A stretch of 64,000 nucleotides of DNA, from the IMG/VR virus record IMGVR_UViG_3300031957_002643, positions 186,001 to 250,000 of that record; one strand, given 5' to 3'. A model generated the notes under the pieces. It saw nothing but the letters and a program-made list of their open reading frames with translations. It had not been told where the DNA came from and made no database searches. The position numbers and the translations under genes were made by a program. Below, piece by piece: positions 3,569-47,288 of the stretch; the first letter of the stretch is position 1, and each line of letters begins with the position of its first letter.

Positions 3569-6500
3569 ATGACTGAACGTAGAGTATTTTCCCTATTACC
3601 AAAGTATTTTCAAACAGATGTCAATAAGCGCCTGCTTGGTGCTACTGATGATCTAGTATTTGAACCTGAAGATTTTGAGCGCATCGAAGGACAAATCGGT
3701 GACGATACAGATGTGTCCGAGTCTGATAAGGCTCGCTCTCCGTTCCTTCCAAATCTAAATCCAGAAGATGACAGATATCAACTTGCTCCATGTGTTGTGA
3801 CGTACAACAAAGATGGATCAGTTGCGAATGGATCATTCTATTCTGATTTGGTCGGTCATATTCTTGCTAATGGTGGTATCACGACCGATGAGTCTCGGTT
3901 ATTTGAATGTGAATATTTTTCATTCAATCCTCCTATCGTTGTTGATCATTGGGTTAATTTTTCCAAGTACTTCTGGACCGGTGACGGGACTGCCGCCGAC
4001 AACGGTGTCTATTTTGTAAAAGAACCAACGGCATCACAAACTGTTCTCTACTACGTCGAGACAGATGGATCAACGACGAAGAAATCTGTGATTTTGGATT
4101 CAAGCGGCCTTTTGGGTGCAGGCGCGACATATAATCCTTCTGGAAACACGACTGGCGCATTACGAGAAGATTGTACTGATGCAGAAAGAGCGATTTATCG
4201 TTGGGATGGTTCAGCATGGCAAATTGTTAATCTCTATCCGATTGATGATTTGGATAATCTACCAGCAGGAATTAATGCTGGTACCTACGTATATGTCGCT
4301 CGGGTCGGCAAAGAGTTTCAAAGACCAGTCATTTTTCACTACAGTTCGAAAGCCGGAAGATGGATTTCGAAGACACCAGTGATCGCCAACGTTGAACCGA
4401 CTAATCCAGTTGAGGGAATGATCTGGGAAGATTCGAGAACAGGCTCAACACGTAAGTTCTTGATTTACGATAACGAAAGTTGGGTTCCACTGACTTATAG
4501 TCATGTGACCACGATGACCGGAATTGGTACACCGGGAGAAGGTGATAATGTATATCGCTATTCTGCAAATGATTTCAGTGCGAGTGATGACCCGTGGCAG
4601 AAAGAAAGCTGGTGGGTGCATTACGAGGACTTCTCACCAACAGACAAATCCAAATATGCTGGAAACCAATCATCAAGACCTATTATCAAATTTTGGTCTA
4701 GTATTGAACAATACAATTTGTCGGATGCAATTGCCCAATATAATATCTATGGACTGAATACTAAAAACAATCCACTAAGAAAGCCGTTGTTTGAAGTATA
4801 CATGTTGGATGATGGTGCTATTGCAAAAGTCAGTACTTTGACTAATACTGATAGTACGCCTATTACTTTCAATGGTAATTCTATTTTTGAATACAAGGTC
4901 ACATCTTCCAATGTTGAAGATGAGATACTAAATCTGAAGCCAACTTATGACTCCACCGGGGAATTAGTATTTGATCTTACACTTGATAGTGCTCAATACT
5001 ACAAAGATAATGCACTGATCAAAGGATATCGTTTCTTTAAAGACACGTGGACGAATAAAATTCATTCTGTGTGGACGAAATCAGTTGATACTCTCTCATA
5101 TGATCAGAGTTCCAAGACTGTTCCTTTGAACTTGAGCAACAACCCAAACCACGACAATATTACCTCAATTAGTAGAAGTAATATTATCAACCATTACAGA
5201 AACATCATTTCATCTAACTCTACGGGTATTCCACTCGGTGATAACAGTTATAGATGGACCGATCATGATCCGGTCAACGGTGCCACTATTATTGATACTG
5301 AAGGGTCACTACTAATTCCAATGGCATTGGTTCAGGACGATCAATATGATCTTGCAGAATCGATCAGAATGATGGCTTTCGAGTACAATAGATTCATGCG
5401 CAGGTTCCACAATAGATTGAAAACATTGTGGAATTCTGGAAGCTATTCTACACCTGATGGAGTTTTGAGTGGAGTAACCGCAACCCAAATGGTTGATAAG
5501 GTCATTTCTGCGGTCACTCTTTTTTCCGATAGCAGTACGCCATTTTGGAATTCTGATATGGGAACCTATGTTGACGAAACGACATCAACGACGAAACCAA
5601 TTCTAATTCCACCATCAGTGTCACGGGTGGGGGCTGGTCCTGCGTATGCTCCTAGAAAATACACAACCGGGTCGATTACCTATATTCTATGCCATGATGG
5701 TACTGTATTGACGGCATATGGCGATGATCGTGATGATGTGATCCTGAATTTGGAAAACAGATTCTATGCCAAGGTTACAGCTAAGCGCAAGTTGGAAACA
5801 GTTAGCGAAAGTGCATTCCTTGATGGACACCAATTCTCATTGAGAAATTTCGTCGGTAATAGAACACCAGACACTAATATTGATGCTGTGGATGATATCG
5901 TAAACGATTATACGGCAGTCGTTTCACCGGCAGCAGACGATAGATATTATTCTAAAACTCATGGCTCATATGTTACGTACAATGGAAGTTCATGGGTCGT
6001 TAGAAAGGCTATCGCTGGTGATGTGTTCTTAGATAATGACGAAAACAAGACATACATCTTCAATGGTTTCGATATTTTTGAACTGAAAACGTATAACCGA
6101 AATGGATCGTTTGATTATTCCACAACCGATTACTATGCTGTCATTAGACGAGAATTTGAGAGATGGTACGTCGATCAAGGATTGGACCCAATAAGCAATT
6201 CTTCATACGATAGTTCGGACGAATGGACGTGGAATTATCACTCATTCGGATTTGAAGGGAATTGGGCCGGACTTTACAAGCGGGTCTATGGGACAGATCG
6301 TCCGCATGTTGCTCCATGGGAGATTCTAGGCTTTACTATAGAGCCTGAGTGGTGGACTGATGCTTATACGGCAGACAGCACGGACAGTGATGGTAATAAG
6401 CGGTACAATGCTTCAAACGGAATGTGGGCTGATTTAAAAACTGGAACATTGATTGCCGCTGAAGGCGTCGAAATCCCCACGAAGTTTCTTTTGAATAGTG

Positions 6501-9500
6501 ATGCTCCTGTTCCGGTGGATGCATCGGGGAATTTGGTTGATCCAATCACATCAGGATTAGTTTCACTTGACCAAGTATTAAACCCAGAACGGGATTGGAA
6601 CTATGGTGATTATAGTCCAATCGAACAACAGTTTAATAATTCATATCTGGGACCATATGCATATGCTCTGGCGGGTTATTTGATGAAGCCTGCCCGGTTT
6701 GTTGAATTCCTATGGTCAGATTATTCATTCACTATCGGTATGGACCAAAGTCTATTTGGTGGCCCTATCACAGTTGACGATGAAACACTAAAAAGACCGA
6801 AACTATCTGATCTAAAAATTCATTCTGAGGAAGAGAACCTTTCTAATCCCGGCATTAATGCATGGATTGCAGAGACATTGAACCTTTCACGCATTTCTCC
6901 CGTTGCATTTGGGGATATGTTGAGAAATACAAATGTTTCTCTTGGGTGGAAGACGAATGGGTTTATTGATAAGAAGTCAACAATAATCAAGACACCTTCT
7001 GGTGTCGAAATTCCATTCGAAGATGTACAATTGGCAGTCCATAAGGGTCTACCGGTTGAAAGTAAATTCCATTCTGGTGTCCAAATCCTAAAGCGCGGGT
7101 CAAAGTACCAAGTGTATGGCTATGATTACACCAATCCATTCTTCAAAATCAATTATTCAGCGAGACCATCTATAGGCGGCAGAACGACTATTGAAGAAAC
7201 CTATACGTCACAAGATGGTATTACATCATTTACCCTGACCAAGTTCAAAGTCGGAAGTGAAAATGATATCGCTAAGTTCACAGTTTTGATTGATGGTTTC
7301 AAGGTAGATTCTAAGTACATCAACATCACGAGCGCGACAACGTTTGAAATCTTTGATCCAAAATTATCATCAGGCCAACAAGTTTCTGCACAGTTAACAA
7401 CGACTTATACCAATCCAAGTACGAGAAGTCGCAAATTTAGTATAGGTGATACTGATTACTTCTATTACACATATAGAACCAACACTATCATTGAATACCC
7501 ATATGGTCATCAGTTCAACAGTCCACAGGAAGTAGTTGAGTTTTTAGCTGATCACGGAAACTATATGGAAGATCAAGGCTGGGAGTATGTTGCCGGTGAT
7601 GATTGGGTTGATGTGGCTAAGCGCTTTGCTTCATGGTCACAAACTGCAACCAATAATCAGATTTTCGTAGATGTACCCTCTGGTTTGGAATTAACACTGA
7701 AATCAAGCTTTGGTCATTTGGCCAATATTGAAAAACTGGTATATGGCGGATATAGCTTATTAGATATTGCTGCTCTTCCGATCAAAGAATTTGATACGTA
7801 CAGATTCGATGACAAGGTTACGGTCAAAACATCTGAATTGATTTTTGGACTACGTGCCAACATTGTTGATTACCAGCATGCAGTGTTTATTTCGAACAAA
7901 ACTCGCTTCAATGATTTGGTTTATGATCCATTCACGGGACTTAGACAGAAGAGATTAGAGATCAAATCATTACGAACCAAAGAATGGGCAGGCCGTATTG
8001 AGACGCCCGGATATGTCATTCTGGACGATGCACTAATTCCGAATTTTGAGAAATATACCAAAGACTTCATTCGTTATTATGACATGCATAACCCTGTATC
8101 TGATCCAAAATTCAGAGATCAGGCGTTCAATCTTTATGGATGGTACTATAAAGACTATATGCGTGAGATGAATATTAATGACATTCAAGCGTTGAAGTTT
8201 CACAAGAGTGCTATCCGTGAAAAGGGGACCAGACGTGCGGTTTCCGGTTTCTCTGTGGCCAAAGATAATGAAGCACCATTAGAAATTTATGAATGCTGGG
8301 CATGGAAAGAGGGCGAATTTGGCAAGACTCCTTATGATAATCCGATCCGGTTCAGCTTATTCGAAAGTGATTTCAGAAATAGAATTCAAGGCGTCAAGTT
8401 TGGAACAACTGACGAAAGCAATGTCATTGAGGTGACTAATTATGACCGCAGTGCATCTCATGACCGCTGGGTGGTAGCTCCACGTGGAACCAATTTCGAA
8501 TTCCCAATGACCGGAGATATCCCAAGCTCAGACTATGATATTAGACTGGTTGTATTGGAAGACGAAACAGTCAGCAAGAAAATGTTCCATTTTGATCCAT
8601 CTAACGGATTACACGAGCCGAATGCATATTCTCAGATTGATATTGAAACAGCATTTGATCCTGCATACTACAACAAGGGTACTGCTCGTACAGGAGAAGG
8701 GTTCGAATGGGCTGAAACTCGTGTTGGAACCATTTGGTGGGATACGACATACCGAGAATACGCGGACTATCACAACACCTCTCTCACGATTAAAGAAGCA
8801 GCAGAGCTATGGGGATCGTTGAAGAAGTTTTCTATCTCTAATACAACATTTGCTAATAGTTCTACCAAGCTTACATCTACGGTAGAGGCCGGACACAATT
8901 TTGTTGTTGATCAGGCAATTATTGTTGAAAACAAAGAGGGAAGAAGACTTAATGGTGTTATTGATGGTGTCAGTGGTAACTCAATAACTTACACCCTGTT
9001 TGATGGTCCAGAAACGATTGCTATTCTAAACAATCCTATTCTATTGTCGAACCTAGTCTCGATGACGAACCGTAGTATTGATGTTTATGAGTGGATAGAA
9101 TCCAAAGTTCCACCATCACAATTCACGTCAGAAGATGGTGACGTGAGTGTTTACAATCCATTGGACCCTTCATACACCGAAGTCACAAGATCGGATAATT
9201 CAAAGAGGTACTATTTTTGGGTCACGAACAGAAAAACAGTAGCTAATGGGAAATTCTTATCGATTTACCAGATTTCTAATCAGTTGAGAGACCCAACATC
9301 AAATCTTCTTCCATGGTTTGGTGTATTGAATAAGAATTCTATGATTTTCAATGCTTCATCGCTTGAGACTAGAAATGATCTATCCATTCAGGTGTTCACT
9401 TATCCAAAACAACACGAAGAACACGATCAGTGGGCCATTTTGGTCGAAGACGACAACCGTTCATACGTCAATGAATCGACCGTCGAAAAGATCATCGATA

Positions 9501-12442
9501 GTTTACAAGGATCAGACTATTATGGAAATACTGTACCGGCAGATTTCAGAACTGATCTGGACAAATATGGTTCTGAAGTAGGTCAGATCATTTTCAGTGA
9601 TGTGGATACGGCAAAAACAGTTTTCTTGAGTTCATTGAATCGAAATCTGAAGAAATACGATAAGGCACAGACATTAGGTTTCACAACTGCATTCCCGGCA
9701 GCGAGCAAATACCCAACATCATCCACCGGATATTGGGAAGAGACTCTTTATGACCTTGTTAACATCCCGCCTTCTCAGATTGTTAATTCTATATCCGAAC
9801 GTGATGCACTGATTGATTTGTTCATTGGTGATATAGTCAAAGTAAACACAAACCCATATGAAGTGTATCAGTACACATCTACAGGATGGGAGAAAGTACA
9901 AGCCGAAAATTCGTCTGCAAAAGTGAATTCCAACATTTTCACTTCACTTAGAAGTATAATGGAGCTGATCAAGGAATTCTTGTCTATCCAAGATTATAAT
10001 CGTGTTATGTTCGATATGATTTATGAGATGATGCGCCAACGCAATAATTGTAATTGGTGTTTCAAGACGAGTTATATTGATGTGATCAATACCGTCAATA
10101 CTGGCCAACCAAGCAGTACACCATTCGACGAAATGGACGTTGTTATCAAATCTGTAAATGATATGAAGCCATATCATTCAAAAATCAGACGAGCCATTGC
10201 ATCGCACGTGATCAATAATGGTGATGATGCTTTTGATTTAGCTGATATGACTGTCACGGACCAGAATTACACCAAAACCACGATTTTCACTGATAGATTA
10301 AGCTTCAATACATTTGATGACAATGCGTTTGATACGGAGCCATTCGATGTTAAAGAATTTGATTATCAGACATGGGATCGATCCGTTTTAGGTACTGATA
10401 ACTATGAAATCATTTCTACTTTCCAGAAAAATGGAAATCAGAAACGCTTCTACATTGGTAAGACCTTCCCGTACCTAGAACATTACATTACAGGAACAAA
10501 CCAAACAACTGGAAGATCAGAATTAGTCCCAATTTACAATCTTCTGTTTGACAATGAGGAATTGACGGTAGTATTCGAGACTGCACCGCCTAGTGGTGTC
10601 ACTTATCGGGTATATCGTGCGTTTGGTTATGCTTCACCGGGACTAATCACAAAAACAACTATTGATGATGATTTTGAAACTATCGATGCCACCTATCGTC
10701 ATGCCGTAGCTGTTGCGGGAGTTGGCTGGCAGGATATTGCCGGTGATGGGGTAGATGTTGATGATTTGGATGGTGGTGATGCGGACGAACGCATCAGAAG
10801 TGAAGTTTCTGATAAATCCATAATCGAAACAACGACTTACTACACCGGATTGTATGCTGGTTTTGATGCTGTGCCGCTTGATACCGCGCCATATGATACC
10901 GCACTGATGCCTACGGCAGAAACTATGTTCAGTGAAAACATCAACAATGATTATCAGTCATTGAGTTTGACCGAAACAATTAATCCTGTTCAAACAATCA
11001 CACTTGCCTCAGACACAAATAGCGGCGCAGTGTTTATGTTTACAGATGGCAGATTTACAGTTGGGCGAGTTCAAATCGATACAGGTTCAGGATATTCAGA
11101 TGTCGATTCTGCTGATTATGATGTTTTTGAAAACAATGCAATACGATTGTACCAAGCATTGTCATCTGGTGACAAGGTTAGGCTAAGAGCATCAAGAATT
11201 AATTTGAAATCAAACTTCTTCAGAATCGCCAACAATGATTTTGATGATTATGAAATTGATAATTCCGTTTTCATTATCAATGACTTACAGTACGCTAATG
11301 GTGCATCATTCGATATAGAATATTATCAGGATTCGTTGTACTCGTTGCGTGGTTCGAATGAATTATTTGGAACCAGACCAAATACAGTCGATGACATTCA
11401 GGATGATTACACACAACTCACGTCAACTACCAATTTGGTTGTCGGATACACAGTCATTAATAGAGCCGATAATAGAATTTATACTTGGGGTGGATCATCA
11501 TGGACCAGTGTTGCTGCCGGGGCTGGTTCATCATTCTGTGTAAGAAGTGAATTGCAGAGATATTACTTTGATGGTTCTGCTTGGGACGTGACGTACACGA
11601 TTGGGGATGGGACTGAAAATCTTATCTACAAATATAATGGTATTACGACAGCAAGTATCCTTGGTGGATCGGATTATGCCGTTGATTACAACTTGGCCTC
11701 ATGGAAAATCCAGCATATTTCTCCTCCAACCAACACCGACGACATAATGGGGTATTGGAATTTCAATTCCATCAAGGGGGAAGGTTATAATGGTGATATC
11801 TTCTATTGGGCTGATGCTTCCGGTAATGGAAACAATTTGATCCAATTGGATGATACCAAAACTCCAACCTATACTGAAAATAATGATCCAACGACCAATA
11901 CAGTTGATTTCACATCTGGAAAAACGTTCGTGGTCAACGATGCATCTTTAACAGGTGCATTTTCGTCCGATGGTGAACTAATTATTTCATTTTCTGTCAC
12001 TAGTGTTTCCTCGTTTACTCTTTTGAATAAAGCGAGCGAATGGGCCATCAGTATTGATACGGGTTCAGCAGGTGATTACAAAGTGATATTCACACACTTG
12101 TTTGATGGTACTAATGGTACTTGGGAAATTGAAGATACCGAACTCGCCACCGGCGACATCATAACAATAAAAATTACATATGATTCGAGTTCTGTGAATA
12201 ATAATCCAATCATCAATTTGAATGGTGTGAACAAGACATCAACTCAGACCTCAACCCCCGCTGGGACAGCAGGATCGGCAACATCTGATCTAACATTCAA
12301 TAATACTGGATCATTCAAATTAGTAAGTGTTCTAATTCTTGGTGTACCGGCAGAATATGAGAATATTATTTCAAATACTCAGATCACAACTGAGGATGGA
12401 AATACATTAAATACTGAAGACGATAACACGATTATTACATAA
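3569..12442 (+). CDS. Very large virion structural protein (baseplate wedge/hub-like) with C-terminal LamG/concanavalin-like domain
   Basis: 2957 aa. N-terminal LLPKYFQTDVNKRLL, repeated Y.WDG..W motifs, FD..PFD acidic repeats and a C-terminal W.DASGNGN beta-sandwich. Preceded by AATAAATA (3537-3544) and followed by baseplate/fibre genes. Confidence 0.7.
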   Translation: MTERRVFSLLPKYFQTDVNKRLLGATDDLVFEPEDFERIEGQIGDDTDVSESDKARSPFLPNLNPEDDRYQLAPCVVTYNKDGSVANGSFYSDLVGHILANGGITTDESRLFECEYFSFNPPIVVDHWVNFSKYFWTGDGTAADNGVYFVKEPTASQTVLYYVETDGSTTKKSVILDSSGLLGAGATYNPSGNTTGALREDCTDAERAIYRWDGSAWQIVNLYPIDDLDNLPAGINAGTYVYVARVGKEFQRPVIFHYSSKAGRWISKTPVIANVEPTNPVEGMIWEDSRTGSTRKFLIYDNESWVPLTYSHVTTMTGIGTPGEGDNVYRYSANDFSASDDPWQKESWWVHYEDFSPTDKSKYAGNQSSRPIIKFWSSIEQYNLSDAIAQYNIYGLNTKNNPLRKPLFEVYMLDDGAIAKVSTLTNTDSTPITFNGNSIFEYKVTSSNVEDEILNLKPTYDSTGELVFDLTLDSAQYYKDNALIKGYRFFKDTWTNKIHSVWTKSVDTLSYDQSSKTVPLNLSNNPNHDNITSISRSNIINHYRNIISSNSTGIPLGDNSYRWTDHDPVNGATIIDTEGSLLIPMALVQDDQYDLAESIRMMAFEYNRFMRRFHNRLKTLWNSGSYSTPDGVLSGVTATQMVDKVISAVTLFSDSSTPFWNSDMGTYVDETTSTTKPILIPPSVSRVGAGPAYAPRKYTTGSITYILCHDGTVLTAYGDDRDDVILNLENRFYAKVTAKRKLETVSESAFLDGHQFSLRNFVGNRTPDTNIDAVDDIVNDYTAVVSPAADDRYYSKTHGSYVTYNGSSWVVRKAIAGDVFLDNDENKTYIFNGFDIFELKTYNRNGSFDYSTTDYYAVIRREFERWYVDQGLDPISNSSYDSSDEWTWNYHSFGFEGNWAGLYKRVYGTDRPHVAPWEILGFTIEPEWWTDAYTADSTDSDGNKRYNASNGMWADLKTGTLIAAEGVEIPTKFLLNSDAPVPVDASGNLVDPITSGLVSLDQVLNPERDWNYGDYSPIEQQFNNSYLGPYAYALAGYLMKPARFVEFLWSDYSFTIGMDQSLFGGPITVDDETLKRPKLSDLKIHSEEENLSNPGINAWIAETLNLSRISPVAFGDMLRNTNVSLGWKTNGFIDKKSTIIKTPSGVEIPFEDVQLAVHKGLPVESKFHSGVQILKRGSKYQVYGYDYTNPFFKINYSARPSIGGRTTIEETYTSQDGITSFTLTKFKVGSENDIAKFTVLIDGFKVDSKYINITSATTFEIFDPKLSSGQQVSAQLTTTYTNPSTRSRKFSIGDTDYFYYTYRTNTIIEYPYGHQFNSPQEVVEFLADHGNYMEDQGWEYVAGDDWVDVAKRFASWSQTATNNQIFVDVPSGLELTLKSSFGHLANIEKLVYGGYSLLDIAALPIKEFDTYRFDDKVTVKTSELIFGLRANIVDYQHAVFISNKTRFNDLVYDPFTGLRQKRLEIKSLRTKEWAGRIETPGYVILDDALIPNFEKYTKDFIRYYDMHNPVSDPKFRDQAFNLYGWYYKDYMREMNINDIQALKFHKSAIREKGTRRAVSGFSVAKDNEAPLEIYECWAWKEGEFGKTPYDNPIRFSLFESDFRNRIQGVKFGTTDESNVIEVTNYDRSASHDRWVVAPRGTNFEFPMTGDIPSSDYDIRLVVLEDETVSKKMFHFDPSNGLHEPNAYSQIDIETAFDPAYYNKGTARTGEGFEWAETRVGTIWWDTTYREYADYHNTSLTIKEAAELWGSLKKFSISNTTFANSSTKLTSTVEAGHNFVVDQAIIVENKEGRRLNGVIDGVSGNSITYTLFDGPETIAILNNPILLSNLVSMTNRSIDVYEWIESKVPPSQFTSEDGDVSVYNPLDPSYTEVTRSDNSKRYYFWVTNRKTVANGKFLSIYQISNQLRDPTSNLLPWFGVLNKNSMIFNASSLETRNDLSIQVFTYPKQHEEHDQWAILVEDDNRSYVNESTVEKIIDSLQGSDYYGNTVPADFRTDLDKYGSEVGQIIFSDVDTAKTVFLSSLNRNLKKYDKAQTLGFTTAFPAASKYPTSSTGYWEETLYDLVNIPPSQIVNSISERDALIDLFIGDIVKVNTNPYEVYQYTSTGWEKVQAENSSAKVNSNIFTSLRSIMELIKEFLSIQDYNRVMFDMIYEMMRQRNNCNWCFKTSYIDVINTVNTGQPSSTPFDEMDVVIKSVNDMKPYHSKIRRAIASHVINNGDDAFDLADMTVTDQNYTKTTIFTDRLSFNTFDDNAFDTEPFDVKEFDYQTWDRSVLGTDNYEIISTFQKNGNQKRFYIGKTFPYLEHYITGTNQTTGRSELVPIYNLLFDNEELTVVFETAPPSGVTYRVYRAFGYASPGLITKTTIDDDFETIDATYRHAVAVAGVGWQDIAGDGVDVDDLDGGDADERIRSEVSDKSIIETTTYYTGLYAGFDAVPLDTAPYDTALMPTAETMFSENINNDYQSLSLTETINPVQTITLASDTNSGAVFMFTDGRFTVGRVQIDTGSGYSDVDSADYDVFENNAIRLYQALSSGDKVRLRASRINLKSNFFRIANNDFDDYEIDNSVFIINDLQYANGASFDIEYYQDSLYSLRGSNELFGTRPNTVDDIQDDYTQLTSTTNLVVGYTVINRADNRIYTWGGSSWTSVAAGAGSSFCVRSELQRYYFDGSAWDVTYTIGDGTENLIYKYNGITTASILGGSDYAVDYNLASWKIQHISPPTNTDDIMGYWNFNSIKGEGYNGDIFYWADASGNGNNLIQLDDTKTPTYTENNDPTTNTVDFTSGKTFVVNDASLTGAFSSDGELIISFSVTSVSSFTLLNKASEWAISIDTGSAGDYKVIFTHLFDGTNGTWEIEDTELATGDIITIKITYDSSSVNNNPIINLNGVNKTSTQTSTPAGTAGSATSDLTFNNTGSFKLVSVLILGVPAEYENIISNTQITTEDGNTLNTEDDNTIIT

Positions 12443-20305: not shown

Positions 20306-21133
20306 ATGATTTATTATGCCATCGGTGACATACATGGAATGTATGATCATCTTCAATCAATGTTGTCTAGAATCAAACTTCATCACGGGCGTGAGTATCC
20401 GAATGAAGAATATCAAATTGTGCTTCTCGGAGACTATGTTGACCGGGGGGCACAATCAAAACAAGTCATTGATTATCTGATTGAACATCAGGAGAAAGAC
20501 AATCTCATCGTTCTGCCCGGAAATCATGAGCAAATGATGCTTGGTATGATTGAAGAATATGATGATGGTAGTTTTGAAAAATATATGATCTGGTGGGCTA
20601 GAAATGGTGGCTTTCGGACCCTTCAGTCATATTTCCCAGAAGATCACCCATCAAGAACGCCCGCCAACTGGATGAGCAGACAAAATTGTCGTGATTGGTC
20701 CGATGAGTGGAAGAACAAGTTCCCAGAACATCACAAATTCTTGGAAACCGTCTTGTTTGGTGGGTATTCGCCAAACAAGACGGTGTATTTTCTAGATTAT
20801 GAAGATCGCATCATGTTTGTACATGCTGGTGTTATTCCGGCCAAAGAACTCAGCCAGCACAATGGGCAAGAATTGCTTTGGTCTCGGGACGCCAGCTTCT
20901 TGACAGATTCAGTAAAATGGATCGAAGAAACCGTAGACATGGTTGTCCATGGTCATACGCCGATGGTGGAGACCGCACGATTTGGCGCTCATCGTTCTGG
21001 TCTCGATGCTGGTGTGTTCTCGACTGGTGAATTGTGCTGTGGTGTGTTTGTAGACGGGGAGCGGGTGGACACTCTGTATGTAGAAGGCCCACCCGCGAAT
21101 TATCATCCGCCGTCAGAGTTTACGAGATACTAA
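20306..21133 (+). CDS. Calcineurin-like metallophosphoesterase (lambda-PP/PrpA Ser/Thr phosphatase type)
   Basis: GDIHG, GDYVDRG, GNHE, FVHAG and HGHTP motifs. Confidence 0.9.
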   Translation: MIYYAIGDIHGMYDHLQSMLSRIKLHHGREYPNEEYQIVLLGDYVDRGAQSKQVIDYLIEHQEKDNLIVLPGNHEQMMLGMIEEYDDGSFEKYMIWWARNGGFRTLQSYFPEDHPSRTPANWMSRQNCRDWSDEWKNKFPEHHKFLETVLFGGYSPNKTVYFLDYEDRIMFVHAGVIPAKELSQHNGQELLWSRDASFLTDSVKWIEETVDMVVHGHTPMVETARFGAHRSGLDAGVFSTGELCCGVFVDGERVDTLYVEGPPANYHPPSEFTRY

Positions 21134-29674: not shown

Positions 29675-30670
29675 ATGAAAAGTATTTTTGGAACCGTCGC
29701 AGGGTCATTCCTGTTTGGAACATCTGTAGAGCGTAGCGATATCGATATTCGCGGCGTTTATATTCCGTCACTGAATGACATTGTGATGCAGCGTGTGAAA
29801 GTCGATAACGCGCCCCTTCGAGAACTCGATACTGCTGCTATCTATAAGCAAGCACGCGGTATCGCCATGCGTTATGGCTTCGGAACACCTGAAGATGGTG
29901 ATGATGTCAACTCTATGCCGTTGCATCATTTCCTTTCGTTGGTTGCGTCTGGTGAAGTCACTACAACTGAACTCATGTTTGCTCCGAACCATTTCTGGAT
30001 TACGGACATGACTGATTATTTCGTGTGGCTGGAAGTCCAGAAGATTCGTTCCAAGATCGTCACGAAACAAATCAAACGTGCAGTCGGTTTCTGTAATGGC
30101 ATCTACATGCAGTTCGGAGTACGTGCTGAACGCCTATCAGCGGCCATTGAAGCACGTGATCTGATTAAGGGACTGGTAGATAGTCATTCTCATAATGCTC
30201 TTCTGGGAGCCTATGAGCGCGATTTCTTGCCACTCACCGAATTGGATCATATCGAACTGGATTCAGATGACCACAACATCAAGATGCTCCGTGTTTGTGG
30301 TCGAGGCCTTCAATACACGGCGACAGTCGGCAATGCATTGAACGTCCTTGAAGGAGCGGTTGCTTCTTATGGCAAGCGTGCGAATGCATCCTTGAACCCG
30401 GAACGCAAGGATTGGAAGTCAGTAATGCATGCGCTCCGAGTGTCAGAACAAACGATTGAACTCCTGAAGGACGGAGAAATTCGTTTCATCCGTCCTAATT
30501 CGGGATATCTTCGTGAAGTTCGTTCGGGTGAACGACCGATGGATGAAGTTACGGCAAAGATCGATGAAAACATGGCAGTCATGAACGAATTGGTCGAAAC
30601 TTCTGATTTGCCGGAAACCGCAGACATGAATGCAATCGAAGAACTGGTCAAGGAACTGTATTTGAGATAG
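29675..30670 (+). CDS. Pol-beta superfamily nucleotidyltransferase (RlaP / T4 NrdC.11-like)
   Basis: GSFLFGT....SDIDIRGVY, DWKSVMHALR, ELL..GEI and S.LPE..D. Confidence 0.85.
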   Translation: MKSIFGTVAGSFLFGTSVERSDIDIRGVYIPSLNDIVMQRVKVDNAPLRELDTAAIYKQARGIAMRYGFGTPEDGDDVNSMPLHHFLSLVASGEVTTTELMFAPNHFWITDMTDYFVWLEVQKIRSKIVTKQIKRAVGFCNGIYMQFGVRAERLSAAIEARDLIKGLVDSHSHNALLGAYERDFLPLTELDHIELDSDDHNIKMLRVCGRGLQYTATVGNALNVLEGAVASYGKRANASLNPERKDWKSVMHALRVSEQTIELLKDGEIRFIRPNSGYLREVRSGERPMDEVTAKIDENMAVMNELVETSDLPETADMNAIEELVKELYLR

Positions 30671-35278: not shown

Positions 35279-35449
35279 TTACAGGTCGATATAGATATTT
35301 TCCGCCAAAGACATCAATTCGACCTCATCATTATCTAGTGAAATCAGTGGAACAATCTCACCTCCAATGTCAATGTTTTGCTGTTCGCGAACGAAATCAC
35401 AAATAGCATTGATAACATCATCTTTATCAAGAGTAATTCTTACTTTCAT
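35279..35449 (-). CDS. Small hypothetical protein
   Basis: ATGA overlap with the upstream gene stop. Confidence 0.55.
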   Translation of the reverse strand: MKVRITLDKDDVINAICDFVREQQNIDIGGEIVPLISLDNDEVELMSLAENIYIDL

Positions 35450-37104
35450 GGTTTTGCTCTCCATTTTGTATCACGCATGGTGATGATTGCACGCTTGCCG
35501 TTCTCGTATGTCACGATCAGCGAGCGAGACCAACTGGATGGACCAGTATTGTAGTCCATGTCCAGATTTGCCATAACACCAGACTGGTAGGCACCATGCA
35601 TGATGCCTGCTGAGTGACTATGACCTATGTTTACCTTGTTTCCGCTCTTCGCGAGGTTTGAAATGGAGCCTCTTGATCCATTCGGACCATTGTCACCATG
35701 CAAGCCGCACTCAATACCATGAACGAGGTAATTTTCATCAGTTCTTAGGAAACGCATCCCTTCTGGAATGCCCATAAGCTCCATCGCATATTCAAATAGA
35801 TGGAAATTTGCTTCCTTCTTGAACTTCGCTTCATAGATTCGTTTCTGAAGCGTCAAGAAAATCAATGCATTAGGCGGATCGTATGCATATGCATCTGGTT
35901 TGTCTTTAAGCCATCTTCGGAGATGGTCATCGTGATTAGAATGAATGACAACCATTTGCATCCAATCACGATGCATTTCTTGGAAGAACTCTGCGACATC
36001 ACGAAGTTCATCTTCTACATTATCGCAGCCGTTGATGAATTTTTCGAAATTCTTATGATGATCCTTGGCGTCGTGGTGGGATCGGGAGTTGAAATCCAAA
36101 CAATCATGCAAATGCAATTCGTTTGGTCTCAAGGTATCGACCATTTCCGCCAAAGAAAGACGGTATTTGTCTTCTAATTGATCAACGTGAATGTCACCCG
36201 GTGTAAGAACATCGATCTCACCGGCTGTTTCCACCTTGTTATTTCGGACTTTATAATTCAGGTCTTGGAAAGACCCATCTTCATCACGTGCCGAAATTTG
36301 ACGGACGAACCAATCACCATCGCTATCAACTTCAACAATGACGGCACCATAGACATGGTTCCAACTACCGTTGTAACCGGTTTTAGTTTTGGTGTAATTT
36401 CTTTGTGTGATGCATCCCGTGGTATACAAGAACTTAGTTGGATCAAATTTACCTGTTGGGATAGACGTTAGTGCGATTTTGGTCGATGGTAGAATGAGCG
36501 AATTACATCCTCTATAATCTTGAAACCCGGATGCTGGATTTCTGACAGTAGGAAGAATTTGTTGCTCACCGCACCAGATCAGACCCGGCGCAAGTTCGAT
36601 TGGATCATCTGAAATGTAATCTCTGATGTTGGGATCGAACCATGTGACATCATCGGTAGCATTATTGTCAATTGCGTCCGGCTTTTCTGATCCCTGCCAT
36701 TTTCTATAGGCCTGAATATTGTATTGGAAGCGAGCAACATGAATTTCAGCTTCTAGAAATTTTGCATAGGCTTCTAGATTGCGAATAAATTCGTGATGGA
36801 CCGTTGTATTGTTCTGGGCTGATGTCAGAATATACCGATACACTTGTCCTTTCGGCGGAAGTGATCGTTTTTCTGGTTCATCAAATGCAATTGAACCTTG
36901 AACCAATGGTTTTCCATCGATCTTTTCAATTTTTTGACCTTCTTCAGTAGGATCGATGCCTGCTTTCTTAAGGTGTTCAGCGATTGTTGATTTCGCCATA
37001 CCCAAAGCTCGTGCCGCAGCGCGACACGAGCCATAGGTGTAGAATGCTTCAATTGCTCTCTGACGCGGAGTCAGATGATCAAATCTATCGTTTTTAAAAC
37101 TCAT
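35446..37104 (-). CDS. HTH plus calcineurin-like phosphoesterase, resembling T5 A1 family
   Basis: N-terminal HTH (AAARALGMAKSTI), ILTSAQNNT, GDIH, HD..DF, SNHD, HGD and GHSH; 552 aa. Confidence 0.65.
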   Translation of the reverse strand: MSFKNDRFDHLTPRQRAIEAFYTYGSCRAAARALGMAKSTIAEHLKKAGIDPTEEGQKIEKIDGKPLVQGSIAFDEPEKRSLPPKGQVYRYILTSAQNNTTVHHEFIRNLEAYAKFLEAEIHVARFQYNIQAYRKWQGSEKPDAIDNNATDDVTWFDPNIRDYISDDPIELAPGLIWCGEQQILPTVRNPASGFQDYRGCNSLILPSTKIALTSIPTGKFDPTKFLYTTGCITQRNYTKTKTGYNGSWNHVYGAVIVEVDSDGDWFVRQISARDEDGSFQDLNYKVRNNKVETAGEIDVLTPGDIHVDQLEDKYRLSLAEMVDTLRPNELHLHDCLDFNSRSHHDAKDHHKNFEKFINGCDNVEDELRDVAEFFQEMHRDWMQMVVIHSNHDDHLRRWLKDKPDAYAYDPPNALIFLTLQKRIYEAKFKKEANFHLFEYAMELMGIPEGMRFLRTDENYLVHGIECGLHGDNGPNGSRGSISNLAKSGNKVNIGHSHSAGIMHGAYQSGVMANLDMDYNTGPSSWSRSLIVTYENGKRAIITMRDTKWRAKP

Positions 37105-40320: not shown

Positions 40321-40836
40321 ATGACCCGTCGTCCTCACTTCATTATGCTTGGTGGTGTCCCCGCTACTGGCAAATCAACCCATCGCGCAACGTTGATGGA
40401 GAAGTATCCTGATGCCTTCGTGTATTCCACGGATGATCGTCTGAAGGAAATTGCTGCAAGCCGTGGCGTTTCTTATGGCGATCTCCCGATGAAGGAACAC
40501 AAGCAGGCAAAGGCCCATATGAACGCCAAATTGAAAGAGGCGATCAATAAGGGTATGGATATTATTTGGGATCAGACTAACTTTTTGGCTCATGTTCGCC
40601 GCAATCGACATGATATGATTCCGAATACCTATACGAAGGAATTGTTTTTCTTCCATTGTCGTGACGATGAAGAAATTAAGCGTCGTATTTCCGAACGCAC
40701 GGAACAGCAGGTGCCATGGCATGTCGTTGCAAACATGATCGAACGTCTGGAACTTCCGGGCGGCGATGATGAGGTGTTCGAAAAATTCGAACTTATCGAT
40801 ACTACGCCTTCATCGACGGATGGTAATAGCGAATAA
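40321..40836 (+). CDS. P-loop kinase (AAA_33 / polynucleotide kinase-like)
   Basis: GVPATGKST, STDD and WDQTN...R.R; preceded by TTTACA-17-TATAAA and 6 nt (leaderless). Confidence 0.85.
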   Translation: MTRRPHFIMLGGVPATGKSTHRATLMEKYPDAFVYSTDDRLKEIAASRGVSYGDLPMKEHKQAKAHMNAKLKEAINKGMDIIWDQTNFLAHVRRNRHDMIPNTYTKELFFFHCRDDEEIKRRISERTEQQVPWHVVANMIERLELPGGDDEVFEKFELIDTTPSSTDGNSE

Positions 40837-45475: not shown

Positions 45476-46267
45476 ATGAAAAGAGAACTGTCAAAAGAAC
45501 TTCCGCTCCGAGTGATCGGTGACGTGCACGGTGGCTTCGAGGAATTCGAAGCCATCGTTCGTCATGGTCTGGAACAAGGCCGCTTCATTGTGTGCCTTGG
45601 CGATCCTGAAGACCGTGGCCCGAACCCGGCCAAAGTGATCGAACTCATCATGGACCTTTATGATGAGGGCAAGGCCGACGAAGTTATGTCCAATCACAAA
45701 TGGAAGCACTATCGGTATTACGATGGTCGTCCGGTGATGCTCAATGACGAGCACAAGAAGACTCGTCGTGATATCAACTCCATGGGCCGTGAATTCGTTG
45801 AACGTTATCTTGAGTTCTGTAAACGAGTTCCGTGGTTTATCCGTCATGGTGATAACTTCTTCGCCCATGCATCATATCATCCGATTGCCTGTGAAGAAGC
45901 ACCGAGCCGGAAGTATCGCAAGATTCTTCAGGAACGCCTGATCTATGGCCAAACGAGTGGACGTATGGAAGGTGGATTACCAGTGCGACTGTTGGATTGG
46001 ATTGACCGTGTTCCTGAAAGCATGAATGTGTTTGTCGGTCACCACATCCTGTCAACCGAAGAAATCCTTCAGTTCCAAACGACTGGTGGGAAGGTCCACT
46101 TTGTTGACCTTGGTTGTCAGTCGCGTGAAGGTGGTCAACTGGCCTATGTTGACATCGATGAAGGAAAGATCACAGGTTCGTCCCATGATATCTCCTTCAA
46201 AGATGATCCTTCGGAATTTGGCGATTATCGTTTGAACGTTTCTGAGAGCAATGCGAATGGCGAGTAA
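45476..46267 (+). CDS. Metallophosphoesterase (PrpE / bacterial Pnkp phosphatase-domain-like)
   Basis: GDVHG, GD..DRGP, SNH..K..RY..GR.V, HA, IYGQT.G....G.PVR..W, VGH and DLGC...GG.L. Confidence 0.85.
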   Translation: MKRELSKELPLRVIGDVHGGFEEFEAIVRHGLEQGRFIVCLGDPEDRGPNPAKVIELIMDLYDEGKADEVMSNHKWKHYRYYDGRPVMLNDEHKKTRRDINSMGREFVERYLEFCKRVPWFIRHGDNFFAHASYHPIACEEAPSRKYRKILQERLIYGQTSGRMEGGLPVRLLDWIDRVPESMNVFVGHHILSTEEILQFQTTGGKVHFVDLGCQSREGGQLAYVDIDEGKITGSSHDISFKDDPSEFGDYRLNVSESNANGE

Positions 46268-46605
46268 AGACGGAACATCATCCGTTCTCTGAATTCGCTT
46301 GCTCCAAAAATTTCAATCATTAATCCCAACCGCGATCCTTCTGGACGCCCGGTTAGTACCAAATACACATCTCGAAAGAACGAACGGAGCCGTTCCTTTC
46401 CGTAGTGTTCCTTGCCAACCGCATAACAGATGGTCATATATTCTTCGGAAGTGTGACCATCTTCTAATTGCGGAAGAAGATCGTTCATTGCACCAATAAA
46501 AATGCGAGCACGCTCATGCAACTCGGCCACTGGTGCGTCGAGTTCAAAGGTATCGTCACTATAGTCAATTAGTGCGAAATAAGCTGCAAGTTCTCTGTAA
46601 TCCAT
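46225..46605 (-). CDS. Stand-alone class I lysyl-tRNA synthetase anticodon-binding-domain-like protein
   Basis: EEYMTICYAVGKEH....LRSFFRDVYLVLTG...GSRLG..I..FG matches the LysRS-I C-terminal pattern; no HIGH/KMSK catalytic domain. Confidence 0.75.
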   Translation of the reverse strand: MDYRELAAYFALIDYSDDTFELDAPVAELHERARIFIGAMNDLLPQLEDGHTSEEYMTICYAVGKEHYGKERLRSFFRDVYLVLTGRPEGSRLGLMIEIFGASEFRERMMFRLYSPFALLSETFKR

Positions 46606-46612
46606 AAATCGG

Positions 46613-46640
46613 ATTATACGTCATTTAGTGGGAAAGTCAA
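46613..46640 (-). promoter_or_regulatory. Sigma70-like promoter, leaderless
   Basis: TTGACT-16-TATAAT, 7 nt before ATG 46605. Confidence 0.7.
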
Positions 46641-46759
46641 CTGATCCGGTAACCAATTAACCAGCAATCGATTCTAAAGAACCATTTGCCATCTTTCTTA
46701 CCGGCCCCAATACGGATCATTCGATTATTTTGATCCAATTCGATCACATCAATTTTCAT
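46637..46759 (-). CDS. 40-aa hypothetical protein (below ORF-track cutoff)
   Basis: MKIDVIELDQNNRMIRIGAGKKDGKWFFRIDCWLIGYRIS fills the gap downstream of the tRNA. Confidence 0.55.
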   Translation of the reverse strand: MKIDVIELDQNNRMIRIGAGKKDGKWFFRIDCWLIGYRIS

Positions 46760-46777: not shown

Positions 46778-46854
<77 letters not shown>

Positions 46855-46883: not shown

Positions 46884-47288
46884 TTAAGTCAAATGGTTTT
46901 TCTGTAAAATCTCATCAACCATGTGATCTCTGACGTTTTGATACATCATGAAACCTGCTGCCCCTTTGAAATTCAAAGGGGCAGCAGTACAATCCAGACC
47001 AATGGTATAAAGACTAGTCCCTTCCATGGCGTGCGAGAAACCAGACCAACTTTGGATACCAGATGATTCTGCATCAACAACGATGTGCTTTTCGCCAGCT
47101 AATGCTAATTTGAAGTTTTTCTTCAAGGTGGCATATTCGGCTTTCGTATCTCTCAGATATTCATAATCTGAGAAGTGCAAGAAGTGTGCAGTTATGTGAT
47201 TGGAATCAACATTAAGCAATTCCTTCAGTCGTGCAATAACAGGAAGACGAACCTCGTTGGGTCCGCGTGTCAAAATTACAGTTCGCAT
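46884..47288 (-). CDS. Hypothetical protein, degenerate P-loop-kinase-like
   Basis: VILTRGP and HIVVD follow AAA_33 topology but GKS/T is missing. Confidence 0.5.
   Translation of the reverse strand: MRTVILTRGPNEVRLPVIARLKELLNVDSNHITAHFLHFSDYEYLRDTKAEYATLKKNFKLALAGEKHIVVDAESSGIQSWSGFSHAMEGTSLYTIGLDCTAAPLNFKGAAGFMMYQNVRDHMVDEILQKNHLT

What the first reader, a model, noticed from the sequence alone, without database searches (positions are those of the whole stretch)
46225..46640. Stand-alone class I LysRS anticodon-binding domain next to the tRNA gene
Seen: a 126-aa ORF whose C-terminal two-thirds (YAVGKEH..LRSFFRDVYLVLTG...GSRLG..I..FG) follows the helical anticodon-binding domain of class I lysyl-tRNA synthetase. 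It has no catalytic domain and has its own near-consensus TTGACT-16-TATAAT promoter. It sits between a Pnkp-like phosphatase and tRNA-Pro. Known: class I LysRS occurs in many alphaproteobacteria, and tRNA-Lys is the target of the anticodon nuclease PrrC. Inference: the protein may shield the tRNA-Lys anticodon from host anticodon nucleases, act as a decoy, or sequester tRNA-Lys to reprogramme translation.
Basis: partly seen in the sequence, partly recalled or inferred. Interest (0 to 1): 0.8.

Follow-up and report, generated by a model that had tools for sequence, protein, structure and literature searches.

The report
Stand-alone phage LysRS anticodon-binding domain
A jumbo phage carries a small, conserved gene that is only the tRNA-anticodon-reading end of a class I lysyl-tRNA synthetase; it belongs to a large, unstudied family in uncultured phages, and its function is untested but may involve lysine tRNA.

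Summary
Window 46225-46605 (minus strand) encodes a 126-aa all-helical protein. It is homologous to the last ~100 residues of class I lysyl-tRNA synthetase (LysRS-I), the "alpha-helix cage" or domain V of the anticodon-binding region: NCBIfam NF001968 E=5.9e-11; family profile vs PDB 1IRX E=1.3e-7; AlphaFold pLDDT 93.9, with top fold hits all bacterial GluRS. No catalytic domain occurs anywhere in the 64-kb window.

It is not a decaying fragment. At least 72 clusters of 96-168-aa stand-alone relatives exist. They form one clade apart from full-length LysRS-I and keep the LysRS-I signature residues (Y61, G64, K65, R74, F77, Y81, G90, R92, G94, G101). All contexts examined look like phage contigs.

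The TTGACT-16-TATAAT promoter is real. An equivalent promoter ends 6-10 nt before the ATG in three syntenic relatives, behind three different upstream genes, and none has a Shine-Dalgarno. That implies a leaderless, probably early, transcript.

The tRNA-Pro and phosphatase neighbours are not conserved outside this phage lineage, so they give no functional clue.

The likeliest function is a trans-acting binder of the tRNA-Lys anticodon loop, possibly blocking tRNA-Lys-cleaving defence nucleases. This is inferred, not shown.

The parts
46225..46605 (-). 126-aa ORF (stop codon 46225-46227): stand-alone homologue of the C-terminal alpha-helical-cage subdomain (domain V) of the class I LysRS anticodon-binding region. 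Predicted helices: 3-15, 26-46, 53-68, 70-85, 93-100, 102-114, 118-124.
46613..46640 (-). Sigma-70-type promoter TTGACT-16 nt-TATAAT. The -10 hexamer ends 7 nt before the ATG and there is no Shine-Dalgarno, so the mRNA is inferred to be leaderless or nearly so. The -35 hexamer overlaps the stop codon of the upstream 40-aa ORF.
   Evidence: An equivalent promoter sits at the same place in L003, L007 and L008, behind different upstream genes.
46637..46759 (-). Context only: conserved 40-aa ORF (phrog_38838) between tRNA-Pro and the domain gene. No link shown.
   Evidence: 87% identical copy in L003.
46778..46854 (-). Context only: tRNA-Pro(UGG). Its adjacency is not conserved and it is not a lysine tRNA. 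No link shown.
45476..46267 (+). Context only: convergent 263-aa calcineurin-like metallophosphoesterase (resembles the Pnkp phosphatase domain, PrpE and NinI). It overlaps the 3' end of the domain gene by 43 nt. It is a neighbour only within this phage lineage.

Best explanation
The gene encodes a functional, selectively maintained stand-alone copy of domain V (the alpha-helix cage) of the class I lysyl-tRNA synthetase anticodon-binding region. It belongs to a large family found in phage-like metagenomic contigs.

Shown:
- the homology and the fold;
- the absence of any catalytic part in the window;
- family-wide retention of the residues that are also invariant in LysRS-I (K65, R74, F77, Y81, the G90-x-R92-x-G94 motif, G101);
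- one clade separate from full-length synthetases;
- autonomy, meaning no conserved partner gene;
- a conserved sigma-70-type promoter placed so that transcription starts at or within a few bases of the ATG.

Inferred:
- it is made early by host RNA polymerase from a leaderless mRNA;
- it binds the anticodon loop of tRNA-Lys in trans through the retained domain-V cleft, which in GluRS holds nucleotides 34 and 35;
- by occupying that loop it interferes with enzymes that must read it.

The most plausible targets are host tRNA-Lys-cleaving defence nucleases (PrrC-type anticodon nucleases, PARIS AriB). A second possibility is host LysRS, which would modulate lysine charging.

Confidence by step: identity as a stand-alone LysRS-I domain V, about 0.95. 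tRNA-Lys binding, about 0.5. Protection against anticodon nucleases, about 0.2-0.25.
For: Homology and fold: NF001968 E=5.9e-11; 40 of 41 members hit NF001968 and only 2 hit GluRS models; 1IRX E=1.3e-7. AlphaFold with the family alignment gives pLDDT 93.9 and pTM 0.87 with seven helices. The top ~20 Foldseek PDB hits are GluRS, presumably the C-terminal domain given the sequence alignments, with TM 0.5-0.56 and probability up to 1.0. The best viral fold hits are a 511-aa protein and the Halogranum virus LysRS.

Retained function-like residues: the positions conserved in the family coincide with those conserved in LysRS-I C-termini, including K65, R74, R92, Y61 and Y81. The C-terminal two-thirds of the protein has net charge +4 (counted from the sequence).

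Real family, not fragments: 72 of 150 representative hits score as family-like, with a tight length range of 96-168 aa. They form one side of a branch with SH-aLRT 99-100. Syntenic orthologues are 46-48% identical.

Autonomy: the domain is the only gene shared across five contexts.

Promoter: conserved in L003, L007 and L008 with the -10 ending 6-10 nt from the ATG and no Shine-Dalgarno. It is unique in the window.

Background: GluRS domain V forms the pocket for nucleotides 34 and 35 (PMC12088422). The LysRS-I and GluRS helical anticodon-binding domains are homologous (PMC2978374). tRNA-Lys is cleaved by PARIS AriB, which recognises the anticodon loop, and the same paper lists PrrC among defence systems that degrade tRNA (PMC10802454).
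Against: - No binding data exist, and no protein-RNA modelling was possible.
- The protein is acidic overall (pI 4.95, net -7; family median pI 4.83), which is unusual for a free RNA binder.
- It lacks domain IV, which in GluRS supplies the contact to nucleotide 36, so affinity and specificity on its own may be low.
- A tight cap on the anticodon would also block decoding and charging.
- No family member occurs in 50,697 deposited phage genomes, so there is no experimental handle or known host.
- Gene neighbourhoods give no tRNA-related signal; they hold NAD-salvage genes, MazG, HNH and small ORFs.
- The promoter and leaderless start are sequence inferences only.
Confidence: 0.4

Rival explanations
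1. The domain has been exapted for protein-protein interaction and no longer binds tRNA. For example, it could bind or inhibit a host protein that normally contacts LysRS-I, or act as an acidic inhibitor or trigger-mask of a defence system. The conserved residues would then serve the fold or a new interface.
For: The family is acidic (median pI 4.83, net -6), with a strongly acidic, family-specific N-terminal third (residues counted). The N-terminal third has diverged from LysRS-I and carries its own conserved positions A8, F36, Y68-G69-K70, F105 and P116. The gene sits among accessory genes in varied contexts. Many early phage accessory proteins are small acidic inhibitors (general knowledge).
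Against: The most invariant residues are exactly those invariant in LysRS-I, including basic and aromatic side chains. That pattern fits retention of the ancestral ligand better than a new partner. The parent domain in LysRS-I is itself mildly acidic (net 0 to -6).
Confidence: 0.25
2. It is a specificity subunit that recruits another enzyme to tRNA-Lys, such as the neighbouring metallophosphatase with the AAA_33 kinase for end-healing of cleaved tRNA, or a tRNA-modifying enzyme. This would be an RNA-repair arrangement like T4 Pnkp/Rnl1, but with a separate targeting protein.
For: A convergent Pnkp-phosphatase-like gene is the immediate neighbour in four lineages. An AAA_33/KTI12-type kinase lies ~5 kb away. 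A weak RlaP-like 'RNA repair' nucleotidyltransferase match lies at 29675-30670.
Against: Those four lineages are collinear relatives, so the adjacency is inherited synteny and not independent evidence. In the four other contexts no phosphatase or kinase is nearby and no partner gene is shared. No RNA ligase was found among the window ORFs scanned. The phosphatase matches PrpE and NinI about as well as Pnkp.
Confidence: 0.12
3. It is one half of a split synthetase. A catalytic LysRS-I core encoded elsewhere in the 335-kb genome would combine with it to charge tRNA-Lys.
For: Huge phages do encode full-length LysRS-I: 14 IMG/VR contigs, most of them 144-578 kb. A 375-aa viral 'lysine-tRNA ligase' exists in Halogranum tailed virus 1. 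Split synthetases are known in some prokaryotes (general knowledge).
Against: No catalytic-domain similarity occurs anywhere in the 64-kb window. The motif scan of IMG/VR found no LysRS-I core on this phage's contig or on its relatives' contigs (this scan is limited by its patterns). Domain IV and the stem-contact fold would also be missing. Small contigs of diverse phages carry the domain alone.
Confidence: 0.05
4. It is a non-functional relic, either a decaying fragment of a captured synthetase gene or a spurious ORF.
For: It is only a fragment-sized piece of a large enzyme. Many short 'LysRS fragment' proteins in databases are truncated gene calls: 78 LysRS-like hits span 69-535 aa.
Against: Intact ORFs of similar length occur in at least 72 clusters that are under 50% identical to each other. 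Their conservation is site-specific and they form a clade of their own. A promoter is conserved upstream. Composition matches the phage (GC 44.9% against 42.1%). The model is confident.
Confidence: 0.03

Closest known systems
C-terminal anticodon-binding region of class I lysyl-tRNA synthetase (PDB 1IRX; NCBIfam NF001968 / TIGR00467)
   Same: Homologous over ORF residues ~13-116. It shares the signature Y-x-x-G-K ... L-R-x-[FW]-F-x-x-x-Y ... G-P/S-R-x-G ... G and the all-helical fold.
   Different: It has no Rossmann catalytic domain, CP or stem-contact fold, and lacks the first helical subdomain. The N-terminal third has diverged and is acidic. Residues conserved in LysRS-I, such as E82 and G86, are relaxed. 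It is encoded as a separate 126-aa protein with its own promoter.
Domain V (alpha-helix cage) of bacterial glutamyl-tRNA synthetase
   Same: These are the best structural matches, with TM 0.5-0.56. The helical cleft that binds anticodon nucleotides 34 and 35 in T. thermophilus GluRS (PMC12088422) maps onto the conserved C-terminal helices of the ORF. That mapping is my inference from the alignment.
   Different: Sequence similarity is marginal (E=0.08-0.24). The family signature is LysRS-type: GPR in place of the GluRS GPE/L, and only 2 of 41 members hit gltX models.
Free-standing paralogues of synthetase parts (Glu-Q-RS/YadB; Trbp111, Arc1p, CsaA tRNA-binding domains; YqeY/GatB tail domain)
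   Same: The principle is the same: a piece of the aminoacylation machinery lives on as an independent protein with a tRNA-related role (general knowledge). Glu-Q-RS as a GluRS paralogue without an anticodon-binding domain is stated in PMC12088422.
   Different: Glu-Q-RS is the inverse case, a catalytic core without the anticodon domain. Trbp111-type proteins are OB-folds and bind tRNA non-specifically. None of them is this helical domain, and none is a phage family.
Phage counter-measures to tRNA-Lys cleavage (T5 non-cleavable tRNA-Lys against PARIS; T4 Pnkp + Rnl1 repair against PrrC)
   Same: If the shielding idea is right, the biological problem would be the same. tRNA-Lys cleavage by PARIS and its rescue by T5 tRNA-Lys are documented in PMC10802454. 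T4 repair is general knowledge.
   Different: Those mechanisms replace or repair the tRNA. A protein that covers the anticodon has not been described in the literature searched. No tRNA-Lys gene or RNA ligase accompanies this gene in the window.
Full-length class I LysRS genes of huge phages (IMG/VR contigs L033-L046)
   Same: They are virus-encoded and contain the same domain.
   Different: They are complete ~500-570-aa enzymes. Their C-termini group with cellular LysRS-I and not with the stand-alone clade.

Membership tests
Class I lysyl-tRNA synthetase (enzyme; NCBIfam NF001968 equivalog) | Rossmann-fold catalytic domain with the class I signature motifs | tested here: not met
   The ORF has only 126 aa. 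tblastn of 7 full-length LysRS-I finds nothing but the C-terminal ~100 residues anywhere in the 64 kb.
Class I lysyl-tRNA synthetase (enzyme; NCBIfam NF001968 equivalog) | Whole-protein score at or above the curated cutoff (648 bits) | tested here: not met
   41.5 bits, E=5.9e-11, covering profile positions 424-517 only.
Class I lysyl-tRNA synthetase (enzyme; NCBIfam NF001968 equivalog) | C-terminal alpha-helical anticodon-binding region homologous to that of GluRS | tested here: met
   Only the second subdomain (domain V) is present.
Pfam PF19269 Anticodon_2 | Score at or above the gathering threshold (23.6 bits) | tested here: not met
   13.8 bits, E=0.078, ORF 37-109 against profile 65-137 of 141. 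Homology is established by other models.
Stand-alone phage LysRS-I domain-V family (defined here; no Pfam or PHROG entry) | A protein of ~96-168 aa consisting of the domain alone and aligning end to end with other members | tested here: met
   No PHROG family matches the members.
Stand-alone phage LysRS-I domain-V family (defined here; no Pfam or PHROG entry) | Invariant K65, F77, G90, R92 and near-invariant Y61, G69, Y81, G94, G101 | tested here: met
Stand-alone phage LysRS-I domain-V family (defined here; no Pfam or PHROG entry) | Forms a group separate from the C-termini of full-length LysRS-I | tested here: met
   One side of a branch with SH-aLRT 99 and 100. The tree is unrooted, uses ~122 columns and samples only 32 LysRS-I sequences.
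Stand-alone phage LysRS-I domain-V family (defined here; no Pfam or PHROG entry) | Encoded in phage genomes | tested here: met
   Every context examined is phage-like or an IMG/VR viral contig. The motif scan of 185,579 prokaryote genomes gave only chance hits in a membrane protein. That scan is limited by its patterns.
tRNA-binding protein specific for tRNA-Lys | Direct, selective binding to the tRNA-Lys anticodon stem-loop | not testable with these tools
   Only indirect evidence is available: retention of the LysRS-I invariant polar residues.
Phage tRNA repair module (T4 Pnkp/Rnl1-like) | Kinase and phosphatase end-healing together with an RNA ligase, genetically linked | tested here: not met
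   The phosphatase-like neighbour and a separate AAA_33 kinase are present, but no RNA ligase was found among the ORFs scanned. The adjacency is not conserved outside the lineage.
Leaderless gene driven by a sigma-70-type promoter | -35 and -10 hexamers with 16-18 nt spacing, -10 ending ~6-10 nt before the start codon, no Shine-Dalgarno, conserved in orthologues | tested here: met
   The transcription start itself was not measured.

The most novel reading that the evidence does not exclude
This family is a widespread protein-based phage counter-defence. It would be an early-expressed 'anticodon cap', derived from a synthetase's own reading head, that binds the tRNA-Lys anticodon loop. That binding would protect the loop from, or blind, tRNA-Lys-directed immune nucleases such as PrrC-type anticodon nucleases and PARIS AriB. 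It would be a third strategy alongside tRNA replacement and tRNA repair.
Probability: 0.2. Interest if true: 0.85.

Novelty: new variant of a known kind. Interest (0 to 1): 0.6.

Why it matters
tRNA-Lys is a recurrent target of bacterial immunity. The known phage answers are spare tRNAs and RNA repair.

A family of free-standing synthetase anticodon-reading domains, conserved across many uncultured phages, would be a new kind of viral tool acting on a specific tRNA. In this lineage it has its own host-type leaderless promoter. Possible roles are shielding tRNA-Lys, sequestering it, or re-routing it.

It would also be an uncommon example of a synthetase recognition module surviving as an autonomous protein. 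That would offer a minimal natural scaffold for studying, or engineering, anticodon recognition by class I LysRS, for which I found no tRNA complex structure (the PDB searches returned only 1IRX for LysRS-I).

Even if the tRNA idea fails, the family is large, well defined and unannotated. It has no Pfam or PHROG entry and no copy in deposited phage genomes.

Tried and rejected
- **Direct homologue searches.** The word-index protein search found only the protein itself. A second one, using the C-terminus of a LysRS-I, also found only the query. tblastn of four family members against 50,697 GenBank phage records found nothing.
- **PDB 9ums_B 'Gp7'.** The single-sequence hit (E=0.09) disappeared with the family profile. 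No paper mentions that entry. I treated it as chance.
- **Top hit P0002.** This 3022-aa protein with 17 matched stretches is a repetitive translation artefact.
- **Single-sequence AlphaFold.** It was poor (pLDDT 55.7) and was replaced by the alignment-based model.
- **Prokaryote genome scan.** The nine hits are a chance FFRDIYLVL string in a membrane protein.
- **Rosetta-stone fusions.** Longer hits are LysRS-type C-termini joined to unrelated domains (T5orf172, SBP_bac_6, BPL_LplA_LipB) on tiny contigs. They are not members of the phage clade and are uninformative.
- **Donor lineage.** No full-length LysRS-I, cellular or viral, is clearly nearest to the clade.
- **Non-coding RNA.** Rfam finds only the tRNA around the gene.
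- **Literature.** Searches for a described phage stand-alone anticodon-binding protein found none.
- **dN/dS.** I did not attempt it because orthologues are only ~46% identical and synonymous sites are saturated.
Full report
**1. What is there**

On the minus strand, 46225..46605 is an ATG-initiated ORF of 126 aa. It lies in a run of minus-strand genes, in transcription order: a 134-aa ORF (46884..47288), tRNA-Pro(UGG) (46778..46854), a 40-aa ORF (46637..46759), then this gene. It converges on a plus-strand 263-aa metallophosphoesterase (45476..46267), and the two 3' ends overlap by 43 nt.

The surrounding 64 kb is the replication and nucleotide-metabolism region of a jumbo phage. It holds a family-B DNA polymerase, ATP-dependent DNA ligase, clamp-loader-like AAA+ protein, type II topoisomerase subunits, a helicase, PhoH, a 5'-3' exonuclease and an AAA_33 kinase, plus ribonucleotide reductase and glutaredoxin (gene table of L001).

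The same sequence sits on a 335,552-bp metagenomic contig that is also an IMG/VR viral genome. Its DNA polymerase is about 37% identical to those of Sinorhizobium phage Phosso and Agrobacterium phage Atu_ph07, and about 34% to Rak2/121Q-like jumbo phages. The tRNA-Pro is 100% identical to a copy in Atu_ph07. This hints at a Rhizobiales-type host but does not show it.

**2.

Sequence evidence:
- The ORF matches the NCBIfam class I LysRS model NF001968 at E=5.9e-11 (ORF 13-107 against profile 424-517 of 528) and TIGR00467 at 3e-5.
- Pfam Anticodon_2 is only a sub-threshold hint.
- A 41-sequence family profile hits the one solved LysRS-I, 1IRX, at E=1.3e-7 (residues 443-519 of 523). It hits a GluRS only marginally.
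- 40 of 41 family members hit NF001968 (best 5.2e-37) and only 2 hit GluRS models. The domain is therefore LysRS-derived, not GluRS-derived.

Structural evidence:
- With the family alignment, AlphaFold gives a confident seven-helix model (pLDDT 93.9, pTM 0.87). The single-sequence model had been poor.
- Its best PDB fold matches are almost all bacterial GluRS structures (TM 0.5-0.56 over the query, probability up to 1.0, E about 0.1-1).
- The best viral matches are a 511-aa protein and the Halogranum virus 'lysine-tRNA ligase'.
- The helical anticodon-binding domains of bacterial GluRS and LysRS-I are accepted homologues (PMC2978374).
- The ESM Atlas independently lists nearest clusters labelled Anticodon_2 or 'LysRS fragment'.

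More exactly, the ORF corresponds to the second helical subdomain, GluRS domain V or the 'alpha-helix cage'. It does not cover the whole anticodon-binding region. In T. thermophilus GluRS, domain V forms the cleft for nucleotides 34 and 35, whereas nucleotide 36 is read by Arg358 of domain IV (PMC12088422). Domain IV has no counterpart here.

**3. Not a fragment of a dying synthetase**

- Seven full-length LysRS-I sequences searched against all six frames of the window hit only 46267-46590, and only with their last ~100 residues. Nothing else scores better than E=0.17.
- The exhaustive representative search found 151 proteins at E<=1e-3, most of them 110-160 aa and aligned end to end.
- Scoring those hits with separate HMMs gives 72 family-like proteins (96-168 aa, median 129). 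It also gives 78 LysRS-like proteins whose lengths spread continuously from 69 to 535 aa, as expected for truncated gene calls.
- In trees, the stand-alone proteins form one side of a branch with SH-aLRT 99. After adding 14 virus-encoded full-length LysRS-I, support is 100. The trees are unrooted and short, so one origin is compatible but not proven, and no donor lineage stands out.
- Column by column, the family conserves the same positions as LysRS-I: Y61, G64, K65, L73, R74, F77, Y81, G90, (P91), R92, G94, G101. The N-terminal third has diverged and has its own conserved positions.
- Composition matches the phage: GC 44.9% and GC3 41.7% against 42.1% for the window.

**4. Promoter and leaderless start**

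TTGACT-16-TATAAT sits at 46640..46613. It is the only TTGAC-N17-19-TATAAT in 64 kb. That alone is weak, because 20 of 100 shuffles give one. The relatives supply the strong evidence:

| Locus | -35 | Spacer (nt) | -10 | Distance to ATG (nt) |
|---|---|---|---|---|
| Window | TTGACT | 16 | TATAAT | 7 |
| L003 | TTGACA | 17 | TATACA | 6 |
| L008 | TTGACT | 17 | TATAAT | 9 |
| L007 | TGGACA | 17 | TATAAA | 10 |

In the window, L003 and L008 the gene upstream differs (a 40-aa ORF, a DUF6794 gene and a 137-aa ORF), and L007 again has a DUF6794 gene upstream. None of the four loci has a Shine-Dalgarno. The promoter therefore travels with this gene, and transcription should begin at or within about 4 nt of the AUG. 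The mRNA would be leaderless or nearly so. Its expression would presumably be early and host-polymerase-dependent, which is inference. More distant members have ordinary GAGGA-type ribosome-binding sites instead.

**5. Neighbours carry no functional signal**

- The phosphatase neighbour recurs in L003-L010, but these are collinear relatives: neighbouring proteins are 34-76% identical and in the same order.
- tRNA-Pro is missing next to the homologue in L007 and L008.
- Other phage lineages show different surroundings. In L014 and L015 the homologue lies between an NMN-adenylyltransferase-Nudix gene and a nicotinamide phosphoribosyltransferase gene, both NAD-salvage functions. In L018 it follows MazG-like and AAA_28 genes. 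In L021 and L023 it sits among small phage ORFs.
- An all-against-all comparison of everything within +-4 kb in these five contexts finds only the domain itself in common.
- No RNA ligase was found among the window ORFs scanned.

The gene therefore behaves as an autonomous cassette acting on something the host provides.

**6. How it probably works**

The domain is inherited from a tRNA-Lys-reading module. It keeps that module's invariant basic and aromatic residues and the helices that build the nucleotide 34/35 cleft. It is autonomous, and in this lineage it has its own host-type promoter.

The simplest reading is a trans-acting tRNA-Lys anticodon-loop binder. tRNA-Lys is cleaved by PARIS AriB, which recognises the anticodon loop (PMC10802454), and by PrrC (general knowledge; the same paper lists PrrC among defence systems that degrade tRNA). 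Interference with such nucleases is therefore an attractive purpose. Modulating host LysRS is a second possibility.

There are real counter-arguments:
- the protein is acidic (net -7; N-terminal third about -11 and C-terminal two-thirds about +4, counted from the sequence);
- it lacks domain IV;
- isolated anticodon-binding domains usually bind weakly (general knowledge);
- a tight cap would also block translation.

My estimates are: identity about 0.95, tRNA-Lys binding about 0.5, nuclease shielding about 0.2-0.25. The rivals are an exapted protein-binding role (0.25), a targeting subunit for repair or modification (0.12), a split synthetase (0.05) and a relic (0.03).

**7. Novelty**

The domain is known. 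The free-standing phage family is not described in the literature I could search. It has no PHROG family, falls below Pfam's threshold, and is absent from 50,697 deposited phage genomes with four different queries. I rate it a new variant of a known kind, with interest 0.6. The anticodon-cap reading has probability about 0.2 and would merit about 0.85.

**8. Limits**

- All relatives are metagenomic, and the hosts are unknown.
- The tree uses ~120 columns and a LysRS-I sample biased toward the query.
- The residue mapping onto the GluRS anticodon cleft goes through a weak pairwise alignment and is inference.
- Only 64 kb of the 335-kb genome was available.
- No step of the proposed mechanism was measured.

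Noticed in passing
window 46637-46759 (-): A 40-aa ORF between tRNA-Pro and the domain gene matches phrog_38838 (E=8.7e-8). It is 87% identical in the relative L003, far more conserved than its neighbours, so it is probably a real small protein of unknown function.
   Followed up: partly
window 46778-46854 (-): tRNA-Pro(UGG), 77 nt ending in CCA, is 100% identical to a stretch of Agrobacterium phage Atu_ph07 that is annotated there as 'hypothetical protein'. It is 92-96% identical to tRNA-Pro of several Rhizobium phages. This hints at the host and points to a missed tRNA annotation in Atu_ph07.
   Followed up: partly
L014 6474-10438 and L015 1867-4791: In two IMG/VR contigs the domain homologue is sandwiched between an NMN-adenylyltransferase-Nudix fusion gene and a nicotinamide phosphoribosyltransferase gene, a phage NAD-salvage pair. 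In L018 the upstream genes are MazG-like and AAA_28 (NadR-kinase-like, weak). A possible recurring link to nucleotide/NAD accessory regions was not tested statistically.
   Followed up: partly
L033-L046 (IMG/VR): Fourteen viral contigs, most of them 144-578 kb, encode full-length class I LysRS of roughly 500-570 aa. Huge phages therefore carry the complete enzyme as well, and their C-termini do not group with the stand-alone clade.
   Followed up: partly
window 40321-40836 (+), 29675-30670 (+), 20306-21133 (+): Scattered genes with an RNA/nucleotide end-processing flavour: an AAA_33/KTI12/Zeta-toxin-like kinase, a weak RlaP ('RNA repair pathway' nucleotidyltransferase) match, and a second calcineurin-like phosphoesterase. 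No RNA ligase was found among the ORFs scanned.
   Followed up: partly
L047 20-595 (protein P0040): A 191-aa protein on an 864-bp contig fuses a T5orf172/MUG113 (GIY-YIG-like) domain to a LysRS-I-type C-terminal domain. Other odd fusions (SBP_bac_6, BPL_LplA_LipB) also appear among the hits. They may be chimeric gene calls or mobile-element insertions into lysS.
   Followed up: partly
L003 8153-8851, L004 8207-8797: Relatives of this phage carry a TnpB-like gene (HTH_OrfB_IS605 / Cas12f1-like_TNB) a few genes from the domain gene. No counterpart appears in the precomputed gene table of this phage's own locus (L001).
   Followed up: no
window 35446-37104 (-): A 552-aa ORF next to the DNA polymerase has only HTH_50/NUMOD1-type N-terminal matches. 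It may be a homing-endonuclease-like or regulatory DNA-binding protein.
   Followed up: no
window 3569-12442 (+): A very large ORF of 2957 aa was not examined.
   Followed up: no
protein P0002 (hit list): The top-scoring representative hit is a 3022-aa protein made of ~100-aa tandem repeats with 17 weak matches to ORF residues 83-118. It looks like a translated repeat array and is unrelated to the family.
   Followed up: yes
window 46225-46267: The domain gene and the convergent phosphatase overlap by 43 nt at their 3' ends. L007 overlaps by 71 nt, while L003 and L008 do not overlap. The overlap consists of the non-conserved tails of both proteins. A weak terminator-like hairpin for the minus strand lies at 46189-46169, inside the phosphatase gene.
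   Followed up: partly
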